Origin: Histomonas meleagridis 2922-C6/04-290x
Lineage: Eukaryota; Protista; Parabasalia
DNA: 64,000 bases
Reading direction: 5' to 3'
Assembly: GCA_020184695.1 (NCBI GenBank)
Contig: JAANOX010000246.1
Location: 62,001-126,000, forward strand
Shown: positions 42,724 to 64,000 of the stretch, piece after piece
Layout of the letters: every line of letters starts with the position of its first letter
Numbering within the stretch: the stretch's first letter is position 1
Made by a program: the position numbers and the translations under genes
Notes under the pieces: generated by a model
The model's input: only the letters and a program-made list of their open reading frames with translations
What the model was told of the DNA's origin: nothing
The model's database searches: none

Positions 42724-43289
42724 GATCCATACTTTTATAAATTATTGGTTTTGCTTTTATATCTTTATTAATTTTTAAATTCTTCTAAATAATATTTTGG
42801 ATTTTGTTGAATTTTGTATATTCTCATTATTCTAAAAAACAATATCATTCAATTTAGAGATTTAGAATCGAAAAAATATAAAATAAGTAGTATAAACTAT
42901 CATAAAATTATAATATCATAATTATACTAAATTTTTTATGAATAGCTTTTGAATAAAATTTCATATGAAAATTATTTATTATCTTTTTATTTTTCATCAT
43001 TTGGAAATATTTAAAAACTAATTTAAGTACTATTGTACTTCGGGGATACTTGTATATTATATAAAATGAAAAGTAGGCTTCCAAAAAAACATATATAGAC
43101 AAAATTACAGTGATTACAATTTTAAAATAATTATTAATATGATGTGTACCTTTAATAAAAAAGAATGATGTTTTTATAAATTATGATTTTTTTGTTTCAA
43201 AATTCGTATTTTTATGTTTTTGATATTTCATCTATTTATGATTTAATGATTTACTTACCCACTTTTTTACTTTTCTCGCCTGTGAGTTG

Positions 43290-43352
43290 ACATGATATAG
43301 GGGAAAAATTTCGCCAGCGCTTCGCGATGGCCATTTTTTCCCTATATCATGT
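43290..43352. repeat. 63-bp fold-back (MITE-like) element with GCGAAGC core on the minus strand
   Basis: The 20-bp arms ACATGATATAGGGGAAAAAT and ATTTTTTCCCTATATCATGT have 1 mismatch and surround an internally paired GC-rich spacer GCCAGCGCTTCGCGATGGC. Confidence 0.75.
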
Positions 43353-43366
43353 TTCACCTTTAAACT

Positions 43367-44259: not shown

Positions 44260-44332
44260 GTATTATATGATATATAAAATAAATGTTTTAAAATTATAAA
44301 AAAAAAAAAAAATTAAAAACATAAAGAAACAT

Positions 44333-44968
44333 TTATTTAGGTTGATGATACATATCAATTTGTTCCGACAAATAGCCTAGAATTGGCGTGTTCATTTCTT
44401 TCGTCTCTTCAGAAAGTTCTTGAAGAATGTTGGAAAGATCTTTCAACAAATTTCGTTCTTCTGAAAGTTCTGAAAGGAGTTGCATTCCTGCCTTCTTCAT
44501 CAACACTACTTCGGACAATGTCTTCAAGATTGAAATAAACATCATCGCGTGAAATAATCGCCGAAACCCATGCTGATGATTTTTCGAATAATTCGCTGAT
44601 GTTGGCGCTATCTTGATATGAATTAGCAATAACTTGCGTCATTTTGTTATTCCCTATTTCTTGACTTAATATTGATAAATCAATCCCTTTGTTTAAAAGT
44701 GCTTGTGATGATTCTTGTAAACAATATGGACAAAAACCCACGTCGGATTATCAGTTTCATCCTCAATACATTCAATATGAAATTGACAATGACAAACTGA
44801 ACAAAAAATCATTTCATCTGAATTCGTTGGTTGACCACACGGACAACGAAATATTGGTGCATTTTCTTCTTCTTTGATTTTTTTATGAAAATTTCGATGC
44901 GATGGCGATGCAAGTCTTGAAAGTTCTGAAAGTCGTTGAAGAGGATCATTCATTATTGATGTGTTCAA
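44333..44968 (-). pseudogene. PHD-finger protein with two frameshifts (pseudogene or consensus errors)
   Basis: CPC...MIFCSVCHCQFHIEC...W then CPYC in a second frame (shift near 44735). A return to the first frame near 44485 gives MQLLSELSEER...HQPK*. Confidence 0.7.
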
Positions 44969-45116
44969 TTATGAAATAAAAGTTATGTGGAATGAGAACG
45001 TTATTTACTTAACGTGCGACTTAAAATGAAATTTGAAATTGTTTTAGTGTTATTTATAGTAAAATATATAAATATAATCCAACAAAAATATTTTTACTCA
45101 TATATATATAAATATT

Positions 45117-46020
45117 TTAATATTCAAAGAGTGCAAGCGAAAGAATACCTTTTTTATGTGAACTACCATTCGAATATATTTTTTTCCCTGTCTCTGCTTC
45201 CCACGTTCGATAATTATGTGCCTCCTGTGATAATATATTTGCTGTCTTTGGTAATGGCAACATCCCAAATCCATTTCATTTGACGGGGATCTTCAAGATG
45301 AAATTTTTCTTTATAATTTATAAAATCATAAATTTTCGATGTTGAATCTGCTGATGTTGTAACAAAATATTTTTCATCTGGTGAAATCTTACTTCGAAGA
45401 ATTACATCTTGATGCGCTTGAAAATTAATTTCTTGGCGAAATTCATTCAATTCTGAATCAAAATTCAAAACAGAAATTTCTCCATTTTGAAGTCCAACTA
45501 AAAATTTATTCCCATTTCGCGTCATGGAAAGACTTCGAATTGGACATTGTCGAACTTGATATTTATTTATTAATTGATAATTCCGATTGTCGTACATTTC
45601 AATAAATCCTTTTTCATCACTTAAAAAAAGATAATTTTCATTAGGATGAAGTAAAATATTATTAAGTGATGTTTCAGTGCTAATTGAATGTTGTGGTCGA
45701 TTGCTTTGTAATGGATCCCAAAATTTAAATGTTCGATCTTCACTACATGAATAAAAATTATTTCCTAAAACTAAATCTGTAACATTTCCTGTATGTCCTG
45801 TAAATTGAACAAATTTTTCATTACTAATAATATTGTGTAAATTAACTTAAGGATTTGTGGCTGTTAAAAATTTCTTATCTTCATGAACTAAAATTCGATT
45901 AACTTGTGAATTAAGAATTGTGACTGGACGAATATTTGGGTCTTCTTCCCATTCAAAAATACTTGTAAATGTAATACTTAAATCTAATCCTGCTGAGATT
46001 AAATAAGGTGTATAATTCAT
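45117..46020 (-). pseudogene. LST8: LST8 (TOR complex WD40 subunit)-like, with internal TAA (45847-45849) and a frameshift near 45215
   Basis: SQVNRI, TNP*V, TGHTGNVT, SCSEDRT, LHPNE, AHQDVILRSKISPDEKYFVTTSADST, KWIWDVA and SHKKG follow the LST8 repeat order over ~300 codons. Confidence 0.8.
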
Positions 46021-46088
46021 AATAAAAGAAATTTTTAATTTTTAATTATTTTGTTAAACGGTCATTTAATCATTTTTTTTTTTTCTAA

Positions 46089-46982
46089 ATGATCCCAAGT
46101 ATTAAAAGTCAATCATTTCGAGAAATTCGATCATCAATGAATCAAAAAGAACATTTGAAAAGTATTCTTCAAAAACATCCATTTATTCATTGTCTTGAAA
46201 TTATCACGAATAAGCAACCACCAACATTTCCTCATTTTTCTGATCATTATTATCAAGTTTTAATAAATCCAAAATTTTTAAAAGATGAAAATGTATTAAA
46301 TGATATTATTGAAGGAAACATTATTTTTGTTTCATTAACACCTATTCATAATGGGAATGGATTATATATTTATAAAGGAAATATTCTTTTTTTAATAAAT
46401 CAAAGTACATATCAACGTTTTGGTCTTCAAGGTCAAAAATATGAAGACAAATATTTAATTTCCATTCAAGCGACAGAACGCGAACGCATTCAACGTCTTC
46501 AAATTGTTGAAAATATCGAAGGGATTCTTTATAGTAATAATTTAAATATTTATGAGAAATATATTGAAAAACTAGAAATTTCCACACCGAACATTGAAGG
46601 ATGGAAAAATATTTCTAATTTTAATTTTAATATTTTTGAAATCTTTGAAAAGAAAAACATTAAACAAGAAGAAATCAAAGAGTTTATTTCTAACCTTGAG
46701 GAAAGTTTTTATAAGGAATTTATAACTATAACATCAAATCTTTCTAAAATTATCATCAAAGGATTTCTTAATGTTTCAGAAATAGAAGAATTTCTGATGA
46801 GTCTTGGAGAAGAATCGTATTGCATCATTAGCATTTGGGATATGAAAGATGTTGTTTCATCATTTTTAGGCAAGAAACTTACGATGAAAGGCATTGGAGG
46901 AGGAACAGAAATGATTTTGTATGGTGACGAATTTCCATTCTCTATCGAAATTCAAACAGTTGAATATTTACAAGAAGAATAA
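46089..46982 (+). CDS. RNase P/MRP subunit Rpp40-like
   Basis: GNILFLINQSTYQRFGLQG resembles Rpp40 GKLILSLDKDTYEETGLQG; C-terminal SIWDMKDVVSSF. Head-to-head with LST8 with a 68-bp gap. Confidence 0.55.
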   Translation: MIPSIKSQSFREIRSSMNQKEHLKSILQKHPFIHCLEIITNKQPPTFPHFSDHYYQVLINPKFLKDENVLNDIIEGNIIFVSLTPIHNGNGLYIYKGNILFLINQSTYQRFGLQGQKYEDKYLISIQATERERIQRLQIVENIEGILYSNNLNIYEKYIEKLEISTPNIEGWKNISNFNFNIFEIFEKKNIKQEEIKEFISNLEESFYKEFITITSNLSKIIIKGFLNVSEIEEFLMSLGEESYCIISIWDMKDVVSSFLGKKLTMKGIGGGTEMILYGDEFPFSIEIQTVEYLQEE

Positions 46983-47105
46983 ACAAATAAATAAATATAT
47001 TATATATAAATAAATGAATAAAATCATATAAAAACATTTTAAATATTTTTTTGAACAAATGAATTTAAAAAGAATAAGGAAAATAATCAACAAAACAATT
47101 TTTAT

Positions 47106-47759
47106 TTAATAAATTAAACAATTATTATTCGATGTTTCATTATTGTCATTATTAAGATATTCTTCTATTTCTTCATCAATATCATGAACAAAGAATAAAT
47201 TCGATTCATTTGGTAACATATTTAATGTCGAAAGATATTTGTTTTGAACTTTAATCGATATATAACGAAAAAGTGTTTGAAGATTAAGTGTTTCAGGAAC
47301 ACTGATTCGAAATAATGGCGCATTGAGTTGCTTCGACATTCGCGTCGATTCTTCAACTTTAATTAAACTATTTTCAATTAAATCTGTTTTGTTTTCAACT
47401 AGAATAACTTCAGTATTAGGTGAATACATTTTAACCTTTTCTAACCATTCTGGAATACTTTCAAATGATGAACGATCTTCAACTGAATAAAAAAGAACAA
47501 AAATATTAACTTCTTCAAAAACATCTTCACTAAGAAAATGATATTTTTCAAGACCTGGTGTATCCCATAGAAATAAATGAACTGATTCTTGTGTGTTTTC
47601 TAAATTATAATTAATTTCATAAAATTCAGAACTTAACGAAGGAATATGTGTTGAAGGAAATTCATTATTTAAATATTTTTGAATAACTGAAGTTTTCCCA
47701 ACCCCACTATTCCCAACGAAAACAATTTTAAAATCATAACCAAGATAACTTTCTTTCAT
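47106..47759 (-). CDS. Rab-family small GTPase (divergent)
   Basis: GNSGVGKT, WDTPGLE and NKTD motifs; C-terminal CLIY. Confidence 0.88.
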   Translation of the reverse strand: MKESYLGYDFKIVFVGNSGVGKTSVIQKYLNNEFPSTHIPSLSSEFYEINYNLENTQESVHLFLWDTPGLEKYHFLSEDVFEEVNIFVLFYSVEDRSSFESIPEWLEKVKMYSPNTEVILVENKTDLIENSLIKVEESTRMSKQLNAPLFRISVPETLNLQTLFRYISIKVQNKYLSTLNMLPNESNLFFVHDIDEEIEEYLNNDNNETSNNNCLIY

Positions 47760-48271
47760 TTTTTTCTTTTCTTTTTTTCTTTTAAGTTTTACGTTTATTA
47801 TTCCCACTTTTCATAAACAACAGAAAATAAATAATCAGCTGCAAAGAAAGTTCTATATATTGTTAATTATATTTCCCATATTAAAATAGTTACAAGTTAT
47901 CTGATAGTTTAAAAACTATAAAATCTTTTTATTAAGCATTTTATTCTATAAAAGCAATTTTAAGTAATTAATTTTTCATTAATTATATTTATAAAAATAA
48001 TATTAATATATAAAAATGGAGTATGAACACAATATTGCTTAAAAAAATTTTACCATAATATATTTGCATAAACAATTAATTTTATAAAGAATATAATGTC
48101 AATATCCTTTTATCTCTTAAATATTCGACATCATTGGTGTGGATTCCTAATTACAATCATCAATATTTTATAATTTTATAACTGATTTTTGATTTAATAT
48201 CGATATTCATTAAAAATTAAAAATGAATGAAGGAATTTTGAATTTTATTCATCTCCTATTAGATTCTATGA

Positions 48272-51200
48272 TCATGGATCAATTTTATTGGAAAATCGTT
48301 CCTTTTTTTTCTTGTATATTATAAACATCACCAATACAGTTAGAGTAGACGCACCAATAATACAAACTACGATTGAAACAGCAAGTACTGCAGAAGAGTG
48401 ACCTTCTTCCACAGTAATTGGTGCATAACTTGATTCAGGTTCTTCTGAGCATGAACATTCTTGACACGATATTTCAGTATATTCTGGACAACTAATTTCA
48501 CTTTGTTCTGGACATGAACATTCAGGAATTGTAATTTCTGTAGGTTCTTGATAAATAATTCCATTATCAAATCCATACCATAAATAATGATTATTTTCAG
48601 GATTAATTGTACATTGTTCAAGATAATTATTCCAAGCTGCTTCAATTGGTAATTTAATTATAGGTAATTTTCCTGCATTAACAAAAATATTTTCATTAAA
48701 TGTTGTTGGTGGTTTTATTCCAAGTTTTAATTCTTTTAATTTTATACAATTGTTAAATATATTTGAAGAATCTTGATTCACTGTCGAAATTGAGGATAAA
48801 TCAATTGATTCTAAATTTGTACAACCATTAAAATGATTATCTCCTATCATTATTGATATTTTTGGTAATGAAATTGATAATAAAGAAGAACAATTCATAA
48901 AACAATTAGATGACATAATATTAGCATATTCAACATTAATTGATTTTAATTTTGTTAAATTCGCAAATAAATTATTTGGAATACTAACTAAAAGAGGGAT
49001 CGAAACTTCTTGTAAATTATAATCACCTATTAGATCATCTGACCTCATAGTTTGTTGTAAATCTAAAACTAATTTTGTTAAATTTGGAAGATTTTGTAAT
49101 ACACCATAAGCAAATGTAACATCACATTGAATAAAAATTTCAGTCAAAGAAATACAATTAGTAAATGTTCCACTTTTGTATTTCAGAAATTGTTGCAATA
49201 TTTGCTTCAAATTTAATTAATGTTAAACAATCTTTTAATACATCTCTTAAATCATTAGCTTCTATAAGACCTCCAATAAGTTCTAATGTTTCAACGTTAT
49301 CATTTGTGTATAAATTTAATGAAAGTTTTCGACTTTTATATTCGATTCCATTAATCTTAAATATTTTCATTGGTGGTAAAAGATTTGAATCGATATTAAT
49401 TCCACACCATTTTTCATCTTCTTTAATATCATCCACTACATTTGATTGATCATCATAAATAAGATAATCATCTTTATTAGGTAATTCTAATTGAATATTT
49501 GGACAATTTATAAATGAATCTTTATGAAATGTTGTTGGTTGTTTTGAAGGTAATTTTTATTCGAATTAATTGATTACAATCTTGAAATATTAATGATGCA
49601 GTGTTATCAACATTTTCTAATGAAGATAAATCAATTTCTCTTAAATTATTGCATCCTGAAAATATTTGATCACCATTTAATTGTAAACATCCTGGAATAA
49701 TAATTGTACTTAATAAATTACAACCTAAAAATGCGCCGAAATTAATAACTTTTGTTTCTTTAAATTCAATATATTGTAATAAAGTACAACCACTAAAACA
49801 TTCTTTCATTAAAGAAACACTTTTCATAATTTTAACTTTAGTTAATGTTTTTATATCTTTAAATTGTTCAGATTCAATTATAGAAGATTCCAAAACAGCA
49901 GATTCTAATATCGAAATTTCTGTTAACAATGGGAATTCTGTATGTAATTCATTTAGATGTGATTGTTTAATTAACCCTTTTTGTATTTCTACTTTTTTAA
50001 CTTCTGTAATACCACTAATTTTTTTGCTGCATTAATTAAAGTATCACTATTTAATGATTCTCCATCATTTATTGATACTGTAATATATAATTGAATTAAA
50101 CCAATTCCACACCATTTCAAATCATCACTTAAATCATCTTCAACATCAATATTTGAATCATATAAACGTAATTCATCATTTTTTAACCCAAGAATTATAA
50201 TATCTTTTCCTTTAAATGTATCTTTATTAAATGTTTTTGGTGGAATATTTGGTAAATATATTGAATTTAAAGGACAATCTTTAAATATATTACATGAATC
50301 AGAATTAACATTTTGTAAATTTATAAGACTAATCGAAGTTAATGAAGTACAACCTGAAAAATGATTATCTCCTTCTAATGTAATAATATTTAAACTAATT
50401 GATTCAATACTTTTACAACCACTAAAAGCAGAATCACAAAGTATTTTAGCATCTTCAATTATAACATTTTTAAGTTGAATACAATCTTTAAAACAATTTT
50501 GAGGAATTTTAGTAATTCCTGGTAATGTTATTGAAATAAGAGGTAACCCACTAAAAATCGAATCAGTTAATTCATCTTTTAAAGTTACTGTTTTAGATAT
50601 AATTAAATTTTCAAGAAAAGATAATTTGGTAATACTTTCAAGAATAGAATTTATTGTTAAAATCCCTTTAATAATTTCTAATGTATTAATAGATAATTCA
50701 GAAATACCTGATGATAATATACAATCAGAAAGTTTCATTCCTGTAATTATTTTATTTTGTCCATTTATTTTAATTCCTATTAAAACAGAAGGTATAATAA
50801 GTCCACACCAAAGTCCATCATTTTCTTTATCATCTTCTACTAAATTATTATTATCATATGTTAAATAATCATTTTCAGATGGTAAAATTAATGATAATTG
50901 TTCTTCAAGACCAACAAATACATTTTTATTAAAAGTATTTGGTGGAATTGAAGGGAAATTTAAAGTTTTAAGTTTATGACAACCAGAAAAAATACTATTA
51001 GCATCACTTGGTACAGTTTTCAATTTTTTTAATGAAATTTATAATAATTCATTACAATTATTAAAAATGATTATTACCAATAATATTTTGTAACTTATTT
51101 AATACGATTGTTTTAAGTTTAATACAATCTTTAAAAGCTGAAGAATACATTGAAGTTGCTGTAATTATTACATTTTCTAAAGATAAACAACCACAAAATG

Positions 51201-54200
51201 CTTCTTCACCAATTGAATAAGTTCCATCATATAAAATAGTAATATATTTCAAGTTTATATTATTTGACATAGCATTTTGAAGGAATTTCTTCAATAATAA
51301 CATTTGATGGAATCGTTAAAGAAGTAATAGAAGAAGGAAGTGGGAAATCTGAACCTGATATTTTTCCTTTAATTATTTCAACAATTTTAGAATCTTCATT
51401 AATAATACTTTTTAATGTTAAACCATTAACTATTTCACCATCTATTAAACATGATATTATTGTATAAGATAAAATAAGTGAATAAAATTTCATATTATTA
51501 TCAATTCCATCTGCTTTATCATATTGAATAGCTTCTTCATTAGTTATTCCAATAAGTAAAGGATTACTATCAAATAAAAATGAACCTTGAACTATTGGTG
51601 GTGTACCAGATAATTGAATTGATTTAATATTTGGTGAATTTTCCGAAATATAACCAATGTCATTAACTTTTGTCAAATTTGGTAATTCTATATTTTTAAG
51701 ATTTAAATTATTAGAAAAGAAATGTGAACCTGTAATTGTATCAACAAATGGAAATGAAATGATTTCAAGTGATGTTGGACCATAAAAACAACGTGAACTT
51801 AATTCTTTTGTATTTGGTATATTTATAGATTGAAGATTTATACATCCTTCAAAAGAACTTGTTCCAATTAATCTAATTCCACATTTAATATTTATATTTT
51901 GAATTTTTTGATGATTTTTTAAGAAATTATCAGGAATTATTTGATTTTCAATTGAAGCAGAAGATTCAATTATTAAATCTGTTAAAGTGACAAAAGTATC
52001 TTTGAAAGTATTTAGAACTTCATTTGTTAAATGACCATTGAAATATTGTTAATTGATTAATTTCTGAAGTAACTTTTTCCTGTAGCAAGACATGCATCAT
52101 ATAATGTAATACCAATTCCAAAAGAATTATCAGCACTAATATTAATCCATTCATAATGTTTTAATTCTAAACCACACCAATGATTATCTCCAGCTGTATC
52201 ACCTTCAACATTAATATCATTATCATATATATTAATTGATTCAGGTGGAATTACAATATCACATGTAAGAGATAAAAATGTATCTCTATGAAATGTTAAA
52301 GGAGGTCGATCTGGCATTGATATTGTTTTTAATCCTCTACATCCTTTAAATATATTTGCTGATGTTGAATCAACTGTAACTAAAAATTTTAAGGAAAGTG
52401 ATTCAATATTTTCACAATTTGAAAAAATATAATCGCCTTGAAATTCTTGAATTTTTGGTATTTCGAGTTCAACTAAGCTAATACAACCACTAAATGCAAA
52501 AAGAACCAAGTTTCGTAACTAATGGTAATTTACATTTTTTCATTGCAGTAAAATCTAAAAATCCATTTTCAGGAACATTTAATGCATTTGGGAAGAAAAC
52601 ATTTTCTAATATTTTTGGGGATGGAATAACACCAAATTCAATTGATTGATAACCAAGTGAAATTGTTTTTATATTATTACAATCAGAAAATGCATTCGTT
52701 CCCATATAAGTACATGAATCAAGTTCTAAAATTGTTAATTTTTGACAATTCGAAAAACAATATTCATCAATTGAAGTACAATGTTTTGCATTTACTTCAA
52801 TTAATTGAATACAATCTCTAAACATCCATTTCCTTAAAATTGGTACATTTTCGAATGAAACTTTTTGAAGAACAGAACATCCATCAAATTGACATCCAAC
52901 ATTTCCTTGACCATAAACACTTCTTGTAGAAAGTTCAATAACATTATTAAATGTAACTTCTATAAAAACACATTTATAAAATGCATCAGTTCCAATTGAA
53001 TTTAATTTTGGTGCAATAATATTTTTAAGTTGTATACAATTAGCAAATGCATAATTTCCAATATTTGTACATTCAATAATTTCAACGGAAGTTAATTTTG
53101 GACAAGAATTAAATGCATAATTATCAATTGTTATCAGAGGAGATAAATTAATTNTTGTTAATGATGANATTTCACTAAATGCATATTCACCAATATAATT
53201 AACTAGTGGAGATGTAACATTAGTATATGAATGACATCGAACAAAAAGCACTTCCATCAATAGTTGTTACAACAGGTGTATCGATATAAATAAGTTGAGT
53301 ACAATCTCTGAACATCCATTTTCTAATAATAGGCGTATTTTTCATTGTAATCTTTTTAAGTACAGAACATCTATCAAATTGACATCCAACATTTCCTTGA
53401 CCATAAACACTTCTTGTAGAAAGTTCAATAACATTATTAAATGTAACTTCTATAAAAACACATTTATAAAATGCATCAGTTCCAAGTTTAGTAACAAGTG
53501 GTGCATTAATTGATGAAAGTTGAATACAATTATAAAATGCATAATTATCAATAGTTACACAATTTGGTAATATAACTGTTATTAAATTATTACAACCTTC
53601 AAAAGCATTTTGTGCGATTGTTTGAACAGGTGAATTAATAATTGTTAAATTTGGTAAATTAGCAAATGCAGAATTTCCAATATAATTTAATATTGGGAAA
53701 TCTATATTTGAATAACTTGTACAACCTGTAAATGTTTTTTCATCTATGACTGTAACATTTGGTGCATTAATATCGATCAAAGAATAACAATTTTTAAACA
53801 TCCATTTTCTTAAATTATTCACTAATGGCATTGATATTGATTTAAGTAATTCACAACCTTCAAATTGTGATCCAACATTTCCTTCACCATAAACATTATA
53901 TGTTCCAAATGAAATTACATTTTGTAATATTACATTTTCTATAGATGTATATTGAAAAGCACGATCATTAATTGTTTGTACAGATGGAATTTTAATTAAC
54001 GTAAGTTTTGAACAACCACTAAATCCTTTTGAGTTAATAGTAATACAATTTATTAAATCAATACTAATTAAATTCACACATCCTTCAAAAGCAGCAACAC
54101 CTATAGTAATAACAGAATCTAAAGTAATATTTTGAATCCCTTGACATCCTGCAAAAGCAGATTCATCAATTGTTTGTAATTTTGGGAATGTAATATTACA

Positions 54201-55978
54201 TAATGAAGAACAACCAGAAAATGTTGAAGAATCTGTACTAACAACTTCAGGTGCATCTATTGATTCCAAAACGGAACAATCTTTAAACATCCATTTCTTA
54301 AAATATGTTAAAGCATGTAATGAAATACTTTTAAGATGTGAACAACCTTCGAAACAATTTGCAAAATTCCCACTTCCATAAACATTTCTAATTACGATTG
54401 TTACAAGTTTATTTAATTCAACATGAACTAAAGCTGTTTTATAAAAAGCATCTGAAGAAATTGAAGTTAAAGAAGGCATTGATATTTCTGAAAGCTTAAC
54501 ACAATTTTTGAAACAATAATAACCAATAGATGTTACATTTGAAAATTCTACTTTTTCAAGAGATTGACAATCCATAAAAGAACTTTCACCTATTGTTATA
54601 ACAGAAATCATTTTAACATAAACTAAATTATTATAACCAGAAAATGCATTATCTTCAATCTTATTAATTTTTTGTAATATAAGATTTGTTAAAACTGAAC
54701 AACCTGAAAAAGCATTTGAACCTATTGTTTGAGCATTATCCATATTTAAATTTAATAATGAAGTACAATCTTTAAACATCCAAGCAGGAATACTTCTTGC
54801 TTTTTGAGCAGAAAAACTATTTAAATTATTACAACCCATAAAATATCCACCAACATTATTAGTACCATCAATATTCCCTAATTCAAAATTTTCTAATTCA
54901 TTAAATGTTAATTGTGTTACCCCAATATTCCGAAACGCAGCATATGATATTGATTGAAGTATTGGAATTTCTACACGTGTTAAACTTTTACATCCATTAA
55001 AAGCATTATTCCCTATTGATATACAAACTTTTAAAACGACTGTTTCTAAATTTATACAATTTTGGAAAGCAGATGATTCAATATTTTCTACTTTTAGAAA
55101 ATTAATTTCTTTAATTGTTGGAATATCTTTAAATGAAGCAATTCCGATTGTCTTTAATTCAGGTAAATTTAATGTTGAAAGACTACAACCTGAAAAACAT
55201 CCTTCTTCAATTATTTTAACTTTCTCTCCAATAATTGTATTGAGATTTGAACATCCATTAAAAGCATATTTACTAATTTTTTCAATTTGATTTAATTGAA
55301 TATTTTCAAGAAAAGTACATGAATCAAAACAATAACCATCTTCACTCATTTCTAAAAGATTATTTAAAGTTAATGAAACGAAAGCACAACTTTTGAAACA
55401 ATATGAACCAATATAATTAATTAATGGTGCATTTAATATTGATAAGTGAATACAATCACTAAAAGCATAATCATTTATTGTATTAATTAATGGTAATTCA
55501 ATCGAAGAAAGATCAGTATTTGAAAATCCATAATTATCAATAATTTTTACATTTGGTAAAGTAATTGAAGCTAATGAAACACATGATTGAAAAGCTGAAT
55601 CTTTTTATATGTTCACAAGATGAAAAATTTTTATATTATAAAGAGCACTACATTCAGCAAAAGCTTTTCTCACCAATAATTGTTGCACCATCAATGATTA
55701 CACTTGATAATAAAAACACATCCTTTCATTAAGTTATCACTTATTATCCCTGTGAATGAATCAATATGAATTTCAAGTGTTAATAATGATGTAAATGAAT
55801 TTGAAATTATCAAATTTAATGGAAAATCTCCTGATTTAACATTTAAAGATGTAATAGTATCAATCCCAGCACCATATGAATTAAGGATATCATCAAATGT
55901 ATCACCTGTGTATTCTTGCTGGTTAACTTCAATCACCATAATGGAAGATATTCCAGAAAGCAGAATAACAAAAATCAT
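48272..55978 (-). CDS. Giant modular BspA-like (LRR_5/TpLRR) type I surface protein, about 2500 aa, split by many frameshifts in this sequence
   Basis: Hydrophobic N-terminus at 55978 and continuous TxIgxxAFxxCxxL repeats across successive track ORFs. Ends in a Cys-rich stalk, TM helix and basic tail at 48272. The breaks checked fall in A/T runs; N bases at 53154 and 53168. Confidence 0.85.
52872..53485. repeat. Near-identical internal 124-bp direct repeat (52872-52995 and 53362-53485)
   Basis: One mismatch; offset 490 nt. Confidence 0.92.
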
Positions 55979-56454
55979 ATGAAATCAAAATGGTCGTTTA
56001 TAACAAATTTTTGATAAATTTTGTCTGTTATAATGAAAGAAAATCACGACGACAATATAACAAAGATTGAAAAGAAAATTTGAACAATATTAATCATTGA
56101 GCATTTCAAATCGTTCAAATATTCAAAGCCACGGTTTAATAGAATTCTGTATTCAATCCAAAACCTTTTATAACGTATTTCGCACAATTTTTGAATCGAA
56201 CGAATGATATTTGACAACAAAATCCGTTTTGACAAGTGACCACTTAAATTCAAACAAATTTTCTTAAAATTCTACATTCAAAATATGTGGCCGAAAGAAA
56301 ATGATTTTAACTTCGATTTGCTTAAGTTGTATCATAAATATTTTTGAATTTAATATCAAATTATGTTTAACATTCTCTGTTCATATCCAAGAAATATTTT
56401 AGTTTGTTCAAATTCATTACATTGATTAAAATTATGATGAATATGATAAATTTT
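55975..56454. repeat. Inverted repeat arm 1: BspA start codon plus ~480 bp upstream
   Basis: Reverse complement of 63516-64000. The only differences seen are two homopolymer lengths. Confidence 0.95.
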
Positions 56455-56837
56455 TTTATTATTAAACCATCAGGATAAATTGAAGAAATTCAATATTAAA
56501 TTCTTGAGTTATAAAAAATATTACACCAACATCAATGAATGCGAATTCTTACAAAAGAGTCAACTTTATTATGATTAATATTCATTCTTGTTATGTATTA
56601 ATTTCCATATTATTATATTATTTAAGGATATAAAATGGTTTATATATTCCGATTGTATTCTATCTATATTTGAATATATAAATTTGCAATCTTTATTAAA
56701 TGAAAAGTCTTTCATCAATACAAAATGAATATTATAAAGAAAATGAGTTTCAAAATCTATTACATTTATCTGAGATTAAATTTAATTATATTATTTATTA
56801 ATATATATCCTATTAAAGAATATACAACAATTCTATT

Positions 56838-57860
56838 TCAGCAAAGATTCTTAATTTCTTCAGCTATTTTGTTTCCATTTACGTATTTGATCAACTTTGC
56901 AAGATTCAACACTTCGTTATATTCTTCGTCACTTAAGAACTTCTTACATTTCTTTAATTCATTTACAGCACTTCTATAAAAATATTTATTCTTAACATGC
57001 GCCATATCATTCATAGCTTCCATTTCATCTGATGCAAATATTTTCCTTAATGATTTATATACTTTGGAGTCTTTCTTATTTTGTCCACATAAAAATTCCG
57101 CAATTTTCATTGTGTTCATTGATAAGTCACTGAGTTCGTTAATCGACGAACCATAAAATTTGAAATACTTAATCATATCTTTAAATGTTCCATCGGGATG
57201 TGTTTCAATGAATGTTGACATTGTAAGTGGAAATTCTTGTGTCAGATATACATTGCCAAGTATCGGATCTTGGAATTCATATTTTCCTTGAGCGCCTGTT
57301 AATATATAAACATTGGGAATAAGGCTGAAGCCATGTAAGAAAAATGCTTCGACTGATATGGCGAAGAAAAGATGTTTAAATTTCTTATTTGTTGACATTT
57401 GTTGGATGATTTTCTGAAGAGTGTCAAATAAAAGATAATCATTTTCGTCTGGGAGTGTGAGGAATTGCATGGAACGATCACCAGTATAGAAAATATAAAC
57501 ATTATCGAATTCATTTGATAAAAGTGCAGGACCATTGGATGTGTTGCCAAGTAAAACATTGTAAAAGTTTTGAGATGTGACGTTTTCACCCCTATATGCA
57601 ATGTTTTCAGAACCAGGATAAACATTTATTGAATGGTTTAGATTATGAAAAACTTGGCCGGGATACATGTTTCTTGGTGACAGGGCAATGTCATCACAGT
57701 CCATTAAGATTATCTTATTTTTATCAAACCCATTTTGTATAAGAAGATGATATTGATAGAAAGAATCTGCTGATTCAAAATAACGAGTCCAACCTTTTCC
57801 GCCAGTTAGGATAACTGCCCAATTATCACAAACAACTGTTGACAAGAAAAGAAGGAGCAT
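56838..57860 (-). CDS. Legumain/asparaginyl endopeptidase (C13)-like secreted protein lacking the catalytic dyad
   Basis: Signal peptide then DNWAVI; DDIA...N.YPGQVF; YRGENVT..NFYNVL.G. The His site reads YTGDRS (canonical DHG), and no Cys is present in FFAISVEAFF (canonical EAC). Confidence 0.85.
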   Translation of the reverse strand: MLLLFLSTVVCDNWAVILTGGKGWTRYFESADSFYQYHLLIQNGFDKNKIILMDCDDIALSPRNMYPGQVFHNLNHSINVYPGSENIAYRGENVTSQNFYNVLLGNTSNGPALLSNEFDNVYIFYTGDRSMQFLTLPDENDYLLFDTLQKIIQQMSTNKKFKHLFFAISVEAFFLHGFSLIPNVYILTGAQGKYEFQDPILGNVYLTQEFPLTMSTFIETHPDGTFKDMIKYFKFYGSSINELSDLSMNTMKIAEFLCGQNKKDSKVYKSLRKIFASDEMEAMNDMAHVKNKYFYRSAVNELKKCKKFLSDEEYNEVLNLAKLIKYVNGNKIAEEIKNLC

Positions 57861-58678
57861 CTCCTCCAAAAAATGAAGTGTTCAACATGTTGCTTTTCAA
57901 AAAGTTATTTTTATAGTCAACCTGACCACGGCCAAATAATTTCAGAAAATTAACTTGTTTCATGAAACCCATACATACATTTCTCTTCAAAAAAGCATAA
58001 TATTTTTTAATACAATGATTGTAAAGTCCATCTATTTTTGTAAATAATGCCATTATTTTTTGAAATTTTATTATTCAAAAATAAAAAAATCAGATTACAC
58101 CGATGTAACTAATTTCAGATTTTTCGTTATACATGTAATAGCAAAATTTATCTGTTTATGTTTTCATAAAATTCTTTATGTAATGAAATTCTTTTCAAAT
58201 CATTCTTTGACAAATTATCTTTAAATAAAATATAATAAATAGGAGATATCTATCAAAAATTACCTCTTCTCAAGATGCATTTTCAGGTTTAATGTGGATA
58301 TTGGTTCTGCTAGCATTTTCGGATCAAAAAAATTAATATAAACATAAGCTTATGCGGCAAACATTATTTTTATAAGGTAAGTATTTGAACTTATCTTTAG
58401 TATAATAAAAATGGCATATAGATTTAATCAGATATCTGATTAGTTATAACTATAGATAAGCAAAATTATATAGCACTATGTTAAATAATTTTTTTACAAA
58501 CATCAACATTTAATGAAAGCTTAACGCTAGCCCTGGTGTGTGACACTTAAAAATTTGTTGTGAAAGCATTTAACGTTCTTCCGACCGTTTTGCAACAACC
58601 AGAGCTCTGAATTTTTGAATCGACGTTTTATTTTTTGAATTTTCTAACGTTTTATCCATATAGAAGCAAGAACCATCC

Positions 58679-59488
58679 ATGATCGACACTCTTGCATCTC
58701 ATCTCAACATTTTAAGGATGATATTTGACGCCATAATCATGGTTTTTCCAACTGTAGGGTATATTGACACATGTCGTCTTATGCAAAAATCCAAAAGTTC
58801 AATTCCTTATAATTTCAAAACAGTATTAATCCTCCTAGCAGGCAATGGATGCAAAGTCCTCTACTACATTTATCATCCATATGCTCTTCGAATATTTGGT
58901 CAATCTGTATCACTATTAATCATTGCTTTTGTTCTCACATTTTTCAAGCATTTGTACAAGACTAACCCCTCAAACCGAAGTACAATTTTATCCTATCTTA
59001 ATCCGGATGAAACTTCGTCATTTCATGATTTTGTTTTTTTAATTTCTGCATACACATGTCTATTCTATCTTATTTTCAAGACTTTTTGCTATGTTTTTGG
59101 CCAAACATATATTGTTGAAGCCATTGGAATATTAGGAAATTTAATAGATTCAATAATTTCAGTACCAACATTTATTCAAGTTGTTGTTAGAGGAAATATT
59201 GTCGGTATTTCCGTTGTTCTTATTCTTCAATATCTTCTTGGTGATGTTGTAAAAATCGTATTATTTGTCGTCAGTAACACGCCATGGTTTTTCACTGGTG
59301 GCGCTGTTTTCCAACTTCTCTTAGACAGTATTCTCTTTATCAAATTCTTTTATCTTAAGTCGCGCAGTACCACGAAACTTTCCATTGAAGAAGAACGTTT
59401 AATTTCACCAGTGAATTCATCCGATGAATCATTTGATGATGCTAAAGAGGAAGAAGATATCAATGAAGAAGAAGAAGAAAAAGTATGA
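58679..59488 (+). CDS. PQ-loop repeat membrane protein (PQLC1/SLC66A2/Any1-like)
   Basis: Two PQ-loop-like units (PQ reads PT) and GDVVKIVLF...P..F...AVFQLLLD. The acidic tail has a dileucine-type EEERLI. Confidence 0.8.
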   Translation: MIDTLASHLNILRMIFDAIIMVFPTVGYIDTCRLMQKSKSSIPYNFKTVLILLAGNGCKVLYYIYHPYALRIFGQSVSLLIIAFVLTFFKHLYKTNPSNRSTILSYLNPDETSSFHDFVFLISAYTCLFYLIFKTFCYVFGQTYIVEAIGILGNLIDSIISVPTFIQVVVRGNIVGISVVLILQYLLGDVVKIVLFVVSNTPWFFTGGAVFQLLLDSILFIKFFYLKSRSTTKLSIEEERLISPVNSSDESFDDAKEEEDINEEEEEKV

Positions 59489-59490
59489 CC

Positions 59491-60864
59491 TTAGAAAACA
59501 TTATCCAACGAATCTAGTTCTTCATCACTAGGTATATAGTTTTCATGGAAAAAGTACGTCGCAACGTTCAATATACCTATGATATCGTTGTTCATTAATC
59601 TACCAACAATATCCCAGCCATTATTTTCGTCGAATAAAGATATAAATCTATCCCTAAGTTCCATGTTTTGTGAATTTAATATCCATGAGAAACATTCAAA
59701 TATATTTTGAAGTATATTTACATCTTCAATTTCCATACAATTTATTAGAAATTGTAAAATTTCATTGCTACAAAATGCTGAGGTTTCTTCGAAATTTAAA
59801 TGGATAATAATATTATATACAAGACAAACAACATCTTTCTTTAATTGAAGAGGTGATGGCTGATTAACTACAAGTAAAATTAATTGAACAATGCCTAAGC
59901 GTGAGAGGAAATTCATCCCAAAATTTTCAATGTTTGAGATAGCACTAAACAATTGAAAAAGTGAATGAAGAATTTGAACGTTATTTGATGCGCCTTCGTG
60001 TGCCAAAGCTTTTTCAATAATGGAGCATTCAAACTCATTAGCCATATGGCTGATGCGGAATATTTGACAAATAATATCAAGAATGATTTGAATTGTTTTG
60101 TCGCTGCATTCTGGTGATGAAAGTGATCCGAAAATAACTTGATCAATGTCCGAAATTTGGACAATAGAACTAATGTTACTTTTAACACGAAGAAGCCATA
60201 AGAGAAGTGAAAGATTATCATCAACGGGAATTTGTAGAGATTGACTATGAATTAAATAAAATAAACGTGCTGTCGATTCATTGGCCAAACAAAACTTATG
60301 AAAAGAAATAAGAAGATTCACGGCAAGATATTTTTGTTCTGGTGTTGCAACATTTGATTCGAGAAGTTCAATAAATTTGGTAATGTAAACTCGTGTTTTG
60401 ACATATTTTTCGTAAAATTTGTTTCTGCGAGAAACAGTTAGGAGAATAATTAAGCACTGTTTAAGAAAATCAAGTGATTTGCGATGAATATGCTCAAATA
60501 GATAATAAATAAAAACCTTAAATTTTTCATCAGTAAATGAAATAACAGAGCATATCTTGCAAAATATTTCCAATGAAAGCATTTGAGTGTTTGGAGACAT
60601 TATTGGACTTATACATTCAATTAGAACATCAAGGCATTGACTCTTATAAAAGCTGTCTGAGAACTTGAATTCTTGGGTATTCATTATTTGTAAGAGTTGA
60701 CTAAGGGATTCATTTAATTTTTCTTCATTTTTCTCTTCCCATGAAATAGATATATTATCAAAAACCAGTTGAACGAAGTTTGGTTCGCCAGACCTGCGTT
60801 GGTCTTTGCCACTTATGATATTATTGATACGAGTATTTGCTTCCGAAATCATGAAGGGCTTCAT
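59491..60864 (-). CDS. ARM/HEAT-repeat protein, importin-alpha-like fragment
   Basis: 457-aa helical repeats, LKKDVVCLVYNI, and a C-terminal F...GWDIV..L...D. Confidence 0.55.
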   Translation of the reverse strand: MKPFMISEANTRINNIISGKDQRRSGEPNFVQLVFDNISISWEEKNEEKLNESLSQLLQIMNTQEFKFSDSFYKSQCLDVLIECISPIMSPNTQMLSLEIFCKICSVISFTDEKFKVFIYYLFEHIHRKSLDFLKQCLIILLTVSRRNKFYEKYVKTRVYITKFIELLESNVATPEQKYLAVNLLISFHKFCLANESTARLFYLIHSQSLQIPVDDNLSLLLWLLRVKSNISSIVQISDIDQVIFGSLSSPECSDKTIQIILDIICQIFRISHMANEFECSIIEKALAHEGASNNVQILHSLFQLFSAISNIENFGMNFLSRLGIVQLILLVVNQPSPLQLKKDVVCLVYNIIIHLNFEETSAFCSNEILQFLINCMEIEDVNILQNIFECFSWILNSQNMELRDRFISLFDENNGWDIVGRLMNNDIIGILNVATYFFHENYIPSDEELDSLDNVF

Positions 60865-60927
60865 CGCAAAATCTGGTCTAATTGAATTATTTACTCTGGT
60901 AAACTATACAAAATTTTGTTCAACCAA

Positions 60928-61623
60928 ATGGGCGAGAACATCAACCAATATCAACAGCGAACACGTGGATTCATGATGAATAGTCTAAAATATAATTGCG
61001 CTTTTGAAACAAGACCAAGTTTAAGACAAAAAGTCAACGATGAAGGACATTTCATTCCTTTTTATGGCGATACAATCGTATTTAATTTAGATAACGCAAT
61101 TAAAAACAAAGCATTGGAATTACAAAATGTTCTTTATGAAAATAACCAAAATATCCTTGCAGATCGCATTGATCCATCTACATTTCATGTTACTCTCCAT
61201 GATTTAAGTAACGGAAACTCTAGAAATGAACTCCTTTCTCAAATGGAGCAAAACAAAGAAAGTTCCACAAAAATTTTGGAAATGGTTGAAAGTGAGAAAT
61301 TAGATCCTATCTCTCTTCGCACAGTTAGTGTCTTTAATATGGTTAACACAAGTGTCGTTTTAGGCCTGGAGCCAGCAAATAATCGTTCTTGCTATCGACT
61401 GATGGCTTTACATAATCGATTCCAATCAGTTGTTCGATTGGATTATCCACTCACACTGCACATCACACTTGGATATTATAAGCCAGGGACTTACTCACCT
61501 GAGCAAATATCGCAACTAAACCAAACATTTATGGAATTGAACAAAACTATGGGCGAAGAGTTTTTCTTAGATGAAAAGCAGCTTCTGTACCAGAGATTCG
61601 ACAGTATGAATCATTACTTTTGA
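60928..61623 (+). CDS. 2H phosphoesterase superfamily protein, bacterial-like
   Basis: Two HxT motifs (FHVTLHDL and LHITLGYY) about 90 aa apart, with PFYGDTIVF and FNMVNTSVVLGL. No intron. Confidence 0.85.
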   Translation: MGENINQYQQRTRGFMMNSLKYNCAFETRPSLRQKVNDEGHFIPFYGDTIVFNLDNAIKNKALELQNVLYENNQNILADRIDPSTFHVTLHDLSNGNSRNELLSQMEQNKESSTKILEMVESEKLDPISLRTVSVFNMVNTSVVLGLEPANNRSCYRLMALHNRFQSVVRLDYPLTLHITLGYYKPGTYSPEQISQLNQTFMELNKTMGEEFFLDEKQLLYQRFDSMNHYF

Positions 61624-61708
61624 TTCACGTTTTTAATAAAAGAAACGTTTTTATACACAACCGTAAAATAGATATTACTCTTAAAGCGAATAATTTTATA
61701 GTAAAATA

Positions 61709-62956
61709 TACTAAATACCCGGACTATAAATACAAAAGCAATTTCAAATGTTTTTTTTACTTGGAATAGTATTCCCCATTACTGCTGATTATTGTTTCTA
61801 ATCTGTGAATCCATTCATCAAATACAGACATTAATTCGTCATGGTTAATATTCTTCAAATAATTAGTGATATAGTCATACAAAACCTGTTCGTTTTAGAA
61901 CATATAACCATTCATACTATTTTTTAATTTCCCAAATAAATAGAAGTCACTAGGGGAAATATCATGGGAGTATGGTGGATGTTCAAGTTGAGCCAGTTCG
62001 GAATTTGATATAAAAAATCTTGTTTTTAATGAAGTGTGAGGTCTTGCATTGTCAAAGTGGACTGTATACTTTTTTGAATGTGGATTTCTTCCTTCAGGAT
62101 ATAATTTAATTTCAGATGGTCGAAGTATATTATTAATAATGAAGTAGTCAGAATTAAATTTATTATGTTTTGGTAAAACATCGATAATATAAAATTCCCA
62201 AGGATACCAAAATATTGTAAACATATTTTGGCTCCCCAATTAACCGTCTTGGTTACTTTGGTACATTTTCTCGATCTTGTGAATACATTATTTTGTGATA
62301 ATACCGTAAATAAATCCAGGACTCATCACCAGTTATTACATGATGATATCCTTCCATTTTAAAAATTCTAAGTTGTTGCAAAATTGATTTTGCATATTGT
62401 ACCTGTTTCTTTTTCAGGGCAGACGTTAACATGTGTGGTACCCATTGAAGATGATACTTTTTGAAACCTAATGTTCAAGTTAAAACTTATTTAATTGTGA
62501 TTGGAGTATGACCGCATAGAAATGCTTATCTTTTAACTGTATCAAAAGGTTCTTTATTGAGCCAATATAAAATTTTATCATCAATTCCTTTGGATATGGG
62601 TCTTCCAGGTATATCTAAATTGTTTAGATCTTCCCGACCGCTCTTTATTTCTGATATCCAGAAATACATCTGCGTTCGTTTGTATGCATCCTCCCCATAA
62701 ACATTTTCTAGTTCATTAATCATTTGCTTTCCATTATATCCTTTTTTCATCAAAAAAGATATAACATATCTTTGTTCAAGCATTTAAAAAAATGACACTT
62801 TTCGGTTTTTGATGATTTAAACTCCCCTTATTTCAATGAATCCTTGTAATTTTAATTTTATATTTTATATTTAAAATTCCTCATAAATGAAATATATATT
62901 TATATATGTTATTTTTACATATTACATTTATATAGCTGGAGTCCGGGTATTTAATA
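61709..62956 (-). mobile_element. Tc1/mariner element (DD34D), full length, inactive
   Basis: TIRs TACTAAATACCCGGACT and AGTCCGGGTATTTAATA (1 mismatch), flanked by TA at 61707-61708 and 62957-62958. Length 1248 bp. Confidence 0.88.
61757..62783 (-). pseudogene. Mariner transposase pseudogene
   Basis: HTH (EQRYVISFL...GRP), WVPHML, TGDESW, FDNARPH and YSHDISPSDFYLF with 34 residues between D2 and D3. Several frameshifts and a TAA at 61895-61897. Confidence 0.9.
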
Positions 62957-63515
62957 TACACTACTATATTAATCATATTATTTTATAAAGATATAAAAAA
63001 ATTGTTTTGTGTTGACAAATGTCATTCAGTTTAACAATTTTCAACATTTAAATTTCATAAATTTTTGTTGGTGTTTCTTATTGTTTTCTTGTTATTCATA
63101 TTTTACTCATATACATTATTAAGTAATGAAGATATTTTTATTTAAGGATGCGCCTTAAATATTAAGTTTTCTTTAAAGCTCATCATAACATGTTTCATTA
63201 TTCTTTCTTATTTAAATCATTTATTTCTAATAATTTCTTTGGCCGTCTTTTTTTCCATATTTCTCTTCAAACTCTCGATGCCAAATATAGTATATCCACA
63301 TTTTATGTTACAGCACAGAATACCTCGATTTTTATGGAATAAGATGTTCTACCTGATAATTTGTCTGTGGTTAGTGTGCAAAGATTTCTATGTATTTCCC
63401 TTAATTAAATAATATACTCGTCTACCCACTGTTGTTAATGTTCTTTTTTAAATATCAGGGTTCAAACGGAATCGCCATTTCTCACAACATTGCTATTCTA
63501 CCAGGTGCTTGTTTT

Positions 63516-64000
63516 AAAATTTATCATATTCATCATAATTTTAATCAATGTAATGAATTTGAACAAACTAAAATATTTCTTGGATATGAACAGAGAATGT
63601 TAAACATAATTTGATATTAAATTCAAAAATATTTATGATACAACTTAAGCAAATCGAAGTTAAAATCATTTTCTTTCGGCCACATATTTTGAATGTAGAA
63701 TTTTAAGAAAATTTGTTTGAATTTAAGTGGTCACTTGTCAAAACGGATTTTGTTGTCAAATATCATTCGTTCGATTCAAAAAAATTGTGCGAAATACGTT
63801 ATAAAAGGTTTTGGATTGAATACAGAATTCTATTAAACCGTGGCTTTGAATATTTGAACGATTTGAAATGCTCAATGATTAATATTGTTCAAATTTTCTT
63901 TTCAATCTTTGTTATATTGTCGTCGTGATTTTCTTTTCATTATAACAGACAAAATTTATCAAAAAAATTTGTTATAAACGACCATTTTGATTTCATATGA
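63516..64000. repeat. Inverted repeat arm 2, ending in the BspA ATG (63997-63999) at the window edge
   Basis: Reverse complement of 55975-56454. The match continues to the last base of the window. Confidence 0.95.

What the first reader, a model, noticed from the sequence alone, without database searches (positions are those of the whole stretch)
55975..64000. Inverted duplication of the BspA promoter and start codon brackets a 7-kb gene cassette: possible invertible or gene-converting surface-antigen locus
Seen: 55975-56454 and 63516-64000 are reverse complements, differing only in two homopolymer lengths. The arm contains the BspA upstream region and its ATG, and the match runs to the last base, so a second BspA-like gene probably starts on the + strand at 63997. 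Between the arms lie a dead legumain, a PQ-loop gene, an ARM gene, a bacterial-like 2H phosphoesterase and a mariner. Established: long identical inverted arms allow inversion of the spacer and arm-to-arm gene conversion, and BspA proteins are a large surface family in trichomonads. Inference: this may be a very recent palindromic duplication or a recombinational switch for adhesin variants. A fold-back misassembly is an equally live explanation.
Basis: partly seen in the sequence, partly recalled or inferred. Interest (0 to 1): 0.75.

Follow-up and report, generated by a model that had tools for sequence, protein, structure and literature searches.

The report
39-kb mirror-image gene-block duplication

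Summary
The window is contig C246 (62001-126000) of the attenuated Histomonas meleagridis assembly (Nanopore/Flye, racon-polished with Illumina reads). The 480-bp inverted match is the inner end of two about 16-kb arms: window 40118-56454, and 63516 to 79232 beyond the window. They flank a 7,061-bp single-copy spacer, with 102 kb and 57 kb of unique contig outside. Each arm carries Fip1-like, PHD-like, WD40, Rpp40-like and Rab-like genes, a dispersed repeat and a roughly 2,568-codon membrane-anchored BspA-like gene.

The arms are 99.6% identical at aligned bases. Most differences are 1-2-base homopolymer lengths that break the BspA frame at different places in each copy, in alternating blocks. 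That looks like consensus error left where short reads cannot be placed in a two-copy repeat.

Each BspA promoter and gene lies wholly inside its own arm. Flipping the spacer would therefore change nothing for BspA, and the two copies are not variants, so the switch idea is not supported.

A simple fold-back artefact does not fit a 7-kb unique spacer and unique flanks, but no reads could be examined. A second, smaller inverted duplication lies on contig C245. An earlier scan note reports a 65-kb one, so the scan has found this kind of structure before on other DNA.

The parts
40118..56454 (.). Left arm of the inverted duplication (16,337 bp; C246:102118-118454)
   Evidence: Self-BLAST of the whole contig and a MAFFT alignment of the arms: 99.6% identity at aligned bases, 65 substitutions, 77 indel events
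56455..63515 (.). Single-copy spacer, 7,061 bp, with no internal mirror symmetry
   Evidence: Only the mariner part has other copies in the genome. The rest is unique or has about 70% paralogs. It holds no long inverted repeats
63516..64000 (.). Visible part of the right arm. It runs on to window-equivalent 79232 (C246:125516-141232, 15,717 bp)
48272..55978 (-). BspA-like gene, left copy, about 2,568 codons. It has an N-terminal hydrophobic leader, many LRR_5 repeats, a C-terminal membrane helix and a short basic tail. As assembled it is broken into about 10 frame pieces
   Evidence: Pfam LRR_5 at 7e-140 and 1.5e-16. ORF pieces and tail. Frame breaks coincide with copy-specific extra bases in homopolymers
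55979..56454 (-). 476-bp upstream region of the left BspA-like gene, which is the inner tip of the arm
   Evidence: Alignment of both arm tips
63997..64000 (+). Start codon of the right BspA-like copy. The gene runs to about C246:133689 and is also broken, at different places
47106..47759 (-). Rab/Ras-like small GTPase gene. The right-arm copy lacks 196 bp that include the P-loop
   Evidence: Pfam Ras 9.6e-35. Deletion at left coordinates 47540-47735
46089..46982 (+). Rpp40-like gene (297 aa). The right-arm copy lacks 72 bp in frame
   Evidence: Pfam Ribonuc_P_40 1.8e-6. A 52%-identical 297-aa homologue covers it fully. Deletion
45214..45597 (-). WD40-repeat gene fragment
   Evidence: Pfam WD40 and beta-propeller families. 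67-69% paralogs sit in the C245 inverted duplication
44333..44968 (-). PHD-finger-like gene, frame-broken as assembled
   Evidence: Pfam PHD 1.9e-4, below the cut-off. ORF pieces
43691..44017 (+). 108-aa ORF of unknown function. The right-arm copy lacks 122 bp. A 90% paralogous region lies at window 24700-25518
41600..43075 (.). Copy of a roughly 1.45-kb dispersed repeat (at least 40 copies at 78-87%)
40700..41309 (+). Fip1-like gene. It has one frame break in the left copy, and the right copy lacks 169 bp that include the start codon
   Evidence: Pfam Fip1 6.4e-18.
56838..57860 (-). Spacer gene: an inactive C13 peptidase, closest to GPI-anchor transamidase
   Evidence: Pfam Peptidase_C13 6.2e-37. 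Catalytic His and Cys positions are replaced. The exact protein also occurs on a 1.39-Mb contig
58679..59488 (+). Spacer gene: a 269-aa protein that looks hydrophobic by eye in the translation, with no family match
59491..60864 (-). Spacer gene: a 457-aa protein with no family match
60928..61623 (+). Spacer gene: a weak 2H phosphoesterase-like protein
   Evidence: Pfam 2_5_RNA_ligase2 7e-4, below the cut-off. The exact protein also occurs on a 1.39-Mb contig
61697..62968 (-). Decayed mariner-like element with 29-nt terminal inverted repeats, 547 bp from the right inner junction

Best explanation
This is a real, very recent or homogenised, palindromic segmental duplication in the Histomonas meleagridis genome. 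A 16-kb block of about eight genes is present twice in mirror orientation around 7 kb of single-copy DNA, 39,115 bp in all. The block ends in a giant membrane-anchored BspA-like gene with its 476-bp upstream region. The likely origin, which is inferred, is a replication or repair template-switch event that pasted an inverted copy 7 kb from the original. All four boundaries are blunt and intergenic, with no transposon and no microhomology. The main effect would be doubled gene dosage. The long identical arms would allow arm-to-arm gene conversion and passive spacer flipping. Neither would alter BspA expression, because each promoter and gene sit together inside one arm. Short-read polishing could not place reads in a two-copy repeat. 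Whether the five 72-196-bp deletions in the right arm are real decay or error is open.
For: Arm extent, identity and unique flanks come. The genome is the attenuated H. meleagridis assembly: 281 contigs and 43,133,364 bp match Table 1 of PMC8529796, which was built with Flye on ONT reads and three racon rounds with Illumina reads. The spacer is single-copy and no third copy of the arm's gene-bearing 12 kb (window 44200-56454) turned up at high identity. Proteins of the left flank, the spacer (two) and the right flank each occur as exact sequences on two contigs, one of 1,387,830 bp. That supports the flank-spacer-flank path in an independent assembly. The arms are not identical copies of one graph edge, so they were assembled separately. 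Error signature: 64 of 77 indels are of a single base type, and the small ones lie mostly at runs of 5 or 7. 34 of 35 indels inside BspA are not multiples of 3. At 26 of 33 frame-breaking sites the copy with the shorter run is in open frame and the other is at a break. The open copy alternates in blocks (9 runs against 14.5 expected, p 0.016). Short-read polishing is known to fail in repeats (PMC8812927 abstract). A second inverted duplication with the same signature lies at C245:322151-326015 / 335886-331893.
Against: No reads, coverage or second assembly could be examined, so two physical copies are not proven. The right arm alone carries all five larger deletions. In the one region with an outgroup, it also carries nearly all derived substitutions (18 against 1). 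A low-quality consensus built from few reads would look like that. None of 8 arm ORFs occurs as an exact protein in public collections, against 4 of 7 from unique DNA. The arms are therefore the least trustworthy part of the contig.
Confidence: 0.7

Rival explanations
1. Assembly artefact. The genome has one arm, and the right arm was created by Flye from chimeric or misplaced Nanopore reads, or from a minority structural variant in the culture. Its poor consensus reflects thin read support.
For: All five 72-196-bp deletions and nearly all outgroup-polarised substitutions are in the right arm. Arm ORFs are absent from public proteomes. The assembly was made in --meta mode and polished only with short reads mapped at default settings.
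Against: Template-complement fold-back reads give palindromes without a spacer, typically at contig ends. Here a 7,061-bp unique gene-bearing spacer joins the arm at both of its ends, and 57 kb of unique sequence follows the right arm. The outer end of the arm sequence is joined to two different unique flanks, which itself requires two copies or two haplotypes. The left arm is also error-laden in alternating blocks, so the noise is not one-sided.
Confidence: 0.2
2. Real duplication in which the right arm is truly decaying. The five deletions and the 11-bp deletion in the BspA 5' region are real, so only the left block is functional and the right one is a young pseudogene block.
For: Four of the five larger deletions remove coding sequence: the Fip1-like start, the 108-aa ORF, 24 codons of the Rpp40-like gene and the Rab P-loop. 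They are not tandem-repeat slippage or homopolymer events. The outgroup and homologues show that the left state is ancestral.
Against: Five deletions of 72-196 bp against a true substitution divergence near zero is an odd mutational spectrum. In the one region polarised with an outgroup, which holds two of the five deletions, the right copy also carries the error-like homopolymer and substitution changes. This is a sub-case of the main explanation, not an alternative to the duplication.
Confidence: 0.25
3. Programmed invertible or gene-converting surface-antigen switch. Recombination between the arms would change which BspA variant is expressed.
For: Long near-identical inverted arms are a substrate for inversion and conversion. 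BspA-like proteins are a large surface family in trichomonads (PMC8529796).
Against: Promoter and gene lie together inside each arm, so inversion of the spacer leaves both transcription units unchanged. The two copies are the same gene, not variants. The arms hold seven other unrelated genes. No recombinase gene was found, only a decayed mariner.
Confidence: 0.03

Closest known systems
Palindromic segmental duplications with a unique spacer, such as human Y-chromosome palindromes P1-P8 (PMC8600007, PMC6790999) and the mouse chromosome 12 palindromic SD (PMC13688818)
   Same: Gene-bearing arms in inverted orientation, above 99% identical, around a non-duplicated spacer of several kb. In those systems identity is maintained by arm-to-arm gene conversion and the spacer can invert passively.
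   Different: These arms are far smaller (16 kb), lie in a parabasalid protist, and hold a mixed block of housekeeping-type genes plus one surface-protein gene. Gene conversion and spacer isomers were not shown here, and true arm divergence is masked by assembly error.
Replication-based inverted copy-number variants (template switching, ODIRA and fold-back models; PMC10766186)
   Same: They produce interstitial inverted duplications with a spacer between the inverted copies and novel junctions in unique DNA.
   Different: Those models use short inverted repeats or microhomology at the junctions and often give triplications. Here both novel junctions are blunt in AT-rich intergenic DNA, with no detectable microhomology or short inverted repeat, and there are two copies.
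Residual homopolymer errors in repeats after short-read polishing of Nanopore assemblies (Polypolish paper, PMC8812927)
   Same: The errors are homopolymer-length changes that persist specifically in multi-copy regions because short reads cannot be placed. This explains the arm-to-arm differences and the broken frames.
   Different: Here the erroneous state is usually the longer run, and the corrected copy alternates between arms in blocks of about 0.2-1.9 kb. That winner-takes-all reading is my inference, not something that paper shows.
Other inverted duplications in the same assembly: C245:322151-335886 (found here) and a 65-kb palindrome around a BEACH gene (earlier scan note s1-362560)
   Same: Mirror arms of at least 97.5% identity (BLAST pieces 97.5-99.1% on C245) and kb-scale unique spacers (about 5.9 kb and about 7 kb). 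On C245, indel differences are mostly homopolymer-type.
   Different: Arm sizes differ (about 3.9 kb and about 28 kb), as does gene content. I could not locate or test the 65-kb one.

Membership tests
Palindromic (inverted) segmental duplication with spacer | Two long arms in inverted orientation with very high identity | tested here: met
   16,337- and 15,717-bp arms, 99.6% identical at aligned bases
Palindromic (inverted) segmental duplication with spacer | Non-duplicated spacer between the arms and unique DNA outside them on the same molecule | tested here: met
   The 7,061-bp spacer is single-copy except for its mariner. The same contig has 102 kb and 57 kb of flanks that do not share the arm sequence
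Palindromic (inverted) segmental duplication with spacer | Both copies physically present (read-level or independent-assembly support) | not testable with these tools
The only indirect support is that flank and spacer proteins co-occur on a 1.39-Mb contig
Palindromic (inverted) segmental duplication with spacer | Arm-to-arm gene conversion maintaining identity | not testable with these tools
   True divergence is masked by consensus error, and no population or outgroup data exist for the whole arm
Invertible-DNA expression switch (inverton or shufflon-like) | Inversion changes the connection between a promoter and a gene, or between alternative gene segments | tested here: not met
   The 476-bp upstream region and the whole BspA-like gene lie inside the same arm in both copies
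Invertible-DNA expression switch (inverton or shufflon-like) | Dedicated recombinase encoded in or beside the invertible segment | tested here: not met
   The spacer ORFs are an inactive C13 peptidase, two unknown proteins, a weak 2H phosphoesterase and a decayed mariner
Invertible-DNA expression switch (inverton or shufflon-like) | Both orientations present in a clonal population | not testable with these tools
   Needs long reads
Fold-back (template-complement chimera) assembly artefact | Palindrome with no or minimal spacer | tested here: not met
   The spacer is 7,061 bp with four intact ORFs
Fold-back (template-complement chimera) assembly artefact | Mirror symmetry running to a contig end | tested here: not met
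   Homology stops at C246:141232, and the contig continues to 198,596
BspA-like surface protein (Pfam LRR_5) | Multiple BspA-type leucine-rich repeats | tested here: met
   PF13306 at 7e-140 with 9 stretches in one 709-aa piece and 1.5e-16 in the last piece
BspA-like surface protein (Pfam LRR_5) | C-terminal membrane helix with a short cytoplasmic tail (the membrane-anchored subclass reported for H. meleagridis) | tested here: met
   A 19-residue hydrophobic segment followed by a short basic tail in both copies
BspA-like surface protein (Pfam LRR_5) | Uninterrupted reading frame | tested here: inconclusive
   Both copies are broken about 10 times as assembled. At 26 of the 33 frame-breaking indels the other copy is open there, and the extra base lies in a homopolymer. 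Error is likely but unproven

The most novel reading that the evidence does not exclude
Histomonas meleagridis may make and keep new gene copies preferentially as palindromes with spacers of several kb. Three are now noted in this assembly: this one, C245, and a reported 65-kb one, with spacers of about 7, 5.9 and 7 kb. They would arise by a replication-based inverted-duplication mechanism and stay identical through arm-to-arm conversion. This particular one doubles a giant BspA-like adhesin gene and might have arisen during the 290 in-vitro passages that attenuated the strain.
Probability: 0.15. Interest if true: 0.5.

Novelty: new member of a known kind. Interest (0 to 1): 0.25.

Why it matters
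There are three modest consequences. First, the locus is not a candidate antigenic-variation switch. Second, it flags a practical problem. In this public assembly, two-copy regions carry unpolished homopolymer errors. Genes there, including a roughly 2,568-codon BspA-like gene, look like pseudogenes, and two arm genes tested had no near-identical protein in the public collection. Counts of BspA genes and pseudogenes in this parasite should be read with that in mind. Third, if such palindromes are confirmed to recur in the genome, they would be a useful handle on how parabasalid genomes duplicate genes.

Tried and rejected
- **Exact-protein look-ups:** they found flank and spacer proteins but none of 8 arm ORFs. 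Accession numbers were not positional, so they gave no copy count.
- **Large protein searches:** the Rpp40-like search found only a 52% relative from another organism. The Rab-like search found nothing at E<=1e-40. The arm genes are therefore not annotated in public proteomes and could not be used to count copies in the virulent strain.
- **The 65-kb palindrome of note s1-362560:** I tried to locate it through its BEACH gene. The genome gives 132 BEACH matches on many contigs, so this was abandoned.
- **RNA genes:** Rfam and tRNA scans of 38000-64000 found none.
- **Older palindrome hypothesis:** the spacer is not a diverged inner part of an older palindrome, as it has no inverted symmetry. 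Its central gene is not a paralogue of the similar-sized gene in the right flank.
- **Introns and slippage:** by eye in the printed flanks, the right-arm deletions have no intron-like ends, no tandem-repeat structure and at most 1 bp of microhomology.
- **Racon windows:** spacing of the deletion junctions (2395, 502, 2282 and 1261 bp, coordinates) does not fit 500-bp polishing windows.
- **Published LRR-gene deletion:** the deletion reported in an LRR gene of the attenuated strain (g7085vir, four membrane helices, one BspA motif) does not match this gene.
- Breaks were only located and compared.
Full report
**Observation**

The reported match is real. Windows 55975-56454 and 63516-64000 are reverse complements. 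They differ at three homopolymer sites rather than two: T5 versus T7 twice, and A3 versus A4. The window is G000:C246:62001-126000. Exact protein look-ups also return H. meleagridis names. That assembly was made with Flye (--meta) from Nanopore reads and refined by three rounds of racon with Illumina reads mapped by minimap2 at default settings.

**True extent**

I fetched the rest of the 198,596-bp contig and aligned it to itself.

- The match is only the inner tip of a much longer inverted duplication.
- The left arm is C246:102118-118454 (window 40118-56454, 16,337 bp).
- The right arm is C246:125516-141232 (window 63516 to 79232, 15,717 bp).
- The spacer is 7,061 bp, and the whole structure is 39,115 bp.
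- Homology stops sharply at both outer ends. The contig has 102 kb to the left and 57 kb to the right that do not share the arm sequence.
- The spacer is single-copy apart from its mariner. No third copy of window 44200-56454, the gene-bearing three quarters of the arm, turned up at high identity.
- The arm contains one copy of a roughly 1.45-kb dispersed repeat.

**Content**

Each arm carries, from its outer to its inner end:

- a small lysine-rich ORF;
- a Fip1-like gene (PF05182, 6.4e-18);
- the dispersed repeat;
- a 108-aa ORF;
- a PHD-like gene (weak match, below the Pfam cut-off);
- a WD40 gene;
- an Rpp40-like gene;
- a Rab/Ras-like GTPase;
- a BspA-like gene of about 2,568 codons, with a hydrophobic leader, many LRR_5 repeats, one C-terminal membrane helix and a short basic tail.

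The arm ends 476 bp upstream of the BspA start codon.

The spacer holds:

- a C13 peptidase closest to GPI-anchor transamidase, with both catalytic positions replaced;
- a weak 2H-phosphoesterase-like protein, below the Pfam cut-off;
- a decayed mariner-like element with 29-nt terminal repeats at 61697-62968.

The flanking genes are a RING-finger gene on the left and a Kelch-repeat gene on the right. All four boundaries lie in AT-rich intergenic DNA. By eye in the printed junctions they show no transposon end, short inverted repeat or microhomology.

**Nature of the arm-to-arm differences**

The arms differ by 65 substitutions and 77 indel events.

- 64 of the indels consist of one base type.
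- The small ones sit mostly at runs of 5 or 7 bases in the longer copy.
- Inside the BspA gene, 34 of 35 indels are not multiples of three.

Both BspA copies are broken into about ten frame pieces, but at different places. At 26 of 33 frame-breaking sites the copy with the shorter run is in an open frame and the copy with the extra base sits at a frame break. The reverse holds only once, at an 11-bp deletion in the right copy. The open copy alternates between the arms in blocks: 9 runs against 14.5 expected, one-sided p 0.016.

I read this as follows. The gene was open throughout when it was duplicated, and the breaks are consensus errors. In a two-copy repeat, short reads go to one copy per stretch and leave the other unpolished. 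Short-read polishing is known to fail in repeats (PMC8812927 abstract). The block-wise competition between copies is my inference.

Two further results fit this reading.

- Four of seven proteins from unique DNA occur as exact sequences in public collections, against none of eight arm ORFs (Fisher p 0.026).
- The arms have less long-ORF cover than any flank window of the same size: 0.36 and 0.28, against a flank median of 0.61 and minimum of 0.33.

The breaks were only located and compared.

**The right arm is the odder copy**

All five larger indels (169, 79, 122, 72 and 196 bp) are deletions in the right arm. They are neither tandem-repeat changes nor intron-like. Four of them remove coding sequence: the Fip1-like start, part of the 108-aa ORF, 24 codons of the Rpp40-like gene, and the Rab P-loop.

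A 90% paralogue at window 24700-25518 serves as an outgroup for one region. There it agrees with the left arm at 18 differing sites and with the right arm at 1, and it contains the 122 bp that the right arm lacks. So either the right block is truly decaying or it has the poorer consensus. I cannot tell which.

**Real or artefact**

Evidence against a simple fold-back artefact:

- Such artefacts have no spacer and usually reach a contig end. Here a 7-kb unique, gene-bearing spacer joins the arm at both of its ends, and 57 kb of unique sequence follows.
- The outer end of the arm sequence is joined to two different unique flanks, which itself implies two copies.
- The arms are not byte-identical, so they were assembled separately.
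- The left-flank, spacer and right-flank proteins each also occur on a 1,387,830-bp contig, taken to be one contig of the sister strain's assembly. The overall path is therefore independently supported.

Evidence that stays open:

- The arms are the least reliable sequence on the contig.

I put a real duplication at about 0.7 and an artefact at about 0.2.

**Function**

The switch idea fails on anatomy. Each BspA promoter region and its entire gene lie inside the same arm, and the two genes point away from the spacer. Inverting the spacer would therefore leave both transcription units as they are. The two copies are the same gene rather than variants. The arms carry seven unrelated genes, and no recombinase gene is present.

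What remains is what any long inverted repeat allows. That is doubled dosage if both copies work, arm-to-arm gene conversion, and passive spacer inversion, as in mammalian sex-chromosome palindromes (PMC8600007, PMC6790999). The origin is best pictured as a two-step template switch during replication or repair (compare PMC10766186). The blunt junctions do not show the microhomology those models usually leave.

**Context**

The structure is not unique in this genome. While looking for arm paralogues I found a second inverted duplication at C245:322151-326015 and 335886-331893. It has arms of about 3.9 kb and a spacer of about 5.9 kb, with 11 substitutions and 20 indels, 16 of them homopolymer-type.

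I could not locate or test it. The genome paper reports a 20% duplication level but describes no palindromes.

**Verdict**

It is a new example of a known kind of structure, and its interest is low to moderate.

Noticed in passing
C245:322151-326015 and 331893-335886 (loci L023, L024): A second inverted duplication in the same genome. It has arms of about 3.9 kb and a spacer of about 5.9 kb, with 11 substitutions and 20 indels (16 homopolymer-type, plus 128- and 237-bp indels). It carries a 67-69% paralogue of the WD40 gene in the C246 arm.
   Followed up: partly
window 41600-43075: A copy of a roughly 1.45-kb dispersed repeat with at least 40 copies at 78-87% identity across many contigs. This copy has no long ORF, and the family was not identified.
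   Followed up: no
window 56838-57860 (-): A C13 peptidase closest to GPI-anchor transamidase (9ub7_C, 1.7e-24). The catalytic His and Cys positions are replaced, so it is an inactive homologue. The identical protein occurs on a 1.39-Mb contig, so this is not an assembly error.
   Followed up: partly
window 61697-62968: A mariner-like element with 29-nt terminal inverted repeats (86% complementary) and a decayed transposase, of which an HTH_48 remnant survives. Related copies at 96%, 93% and 91% lie on C227, C231 and C52.
   Followed up: partly
window 24700-25518 and 43363-44175: A 90%-identical dispersed duplicate of an arm segment, including the 108-aa ORF and a GC-richer upstream stretch, on the same contig 18 kb to the left. 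It was used here as an outgroup.
   Followed up: partly
window 40118-56454 (arm genes): The Rpp40-like and Rab-like arm genes have no near-identical protein in the 5.8-billion-protein collection, although flank and spacer proteins do. Duplicated regions of this assembly seem to be missing from the public annotation.
   Followed up: partly
window 53154 and 53168: Two single N letters inside the left BspA copy, within an internal repeat of about 490 bp (52799-53556) where substitutions between the arms also cluster.
   Followed up: no
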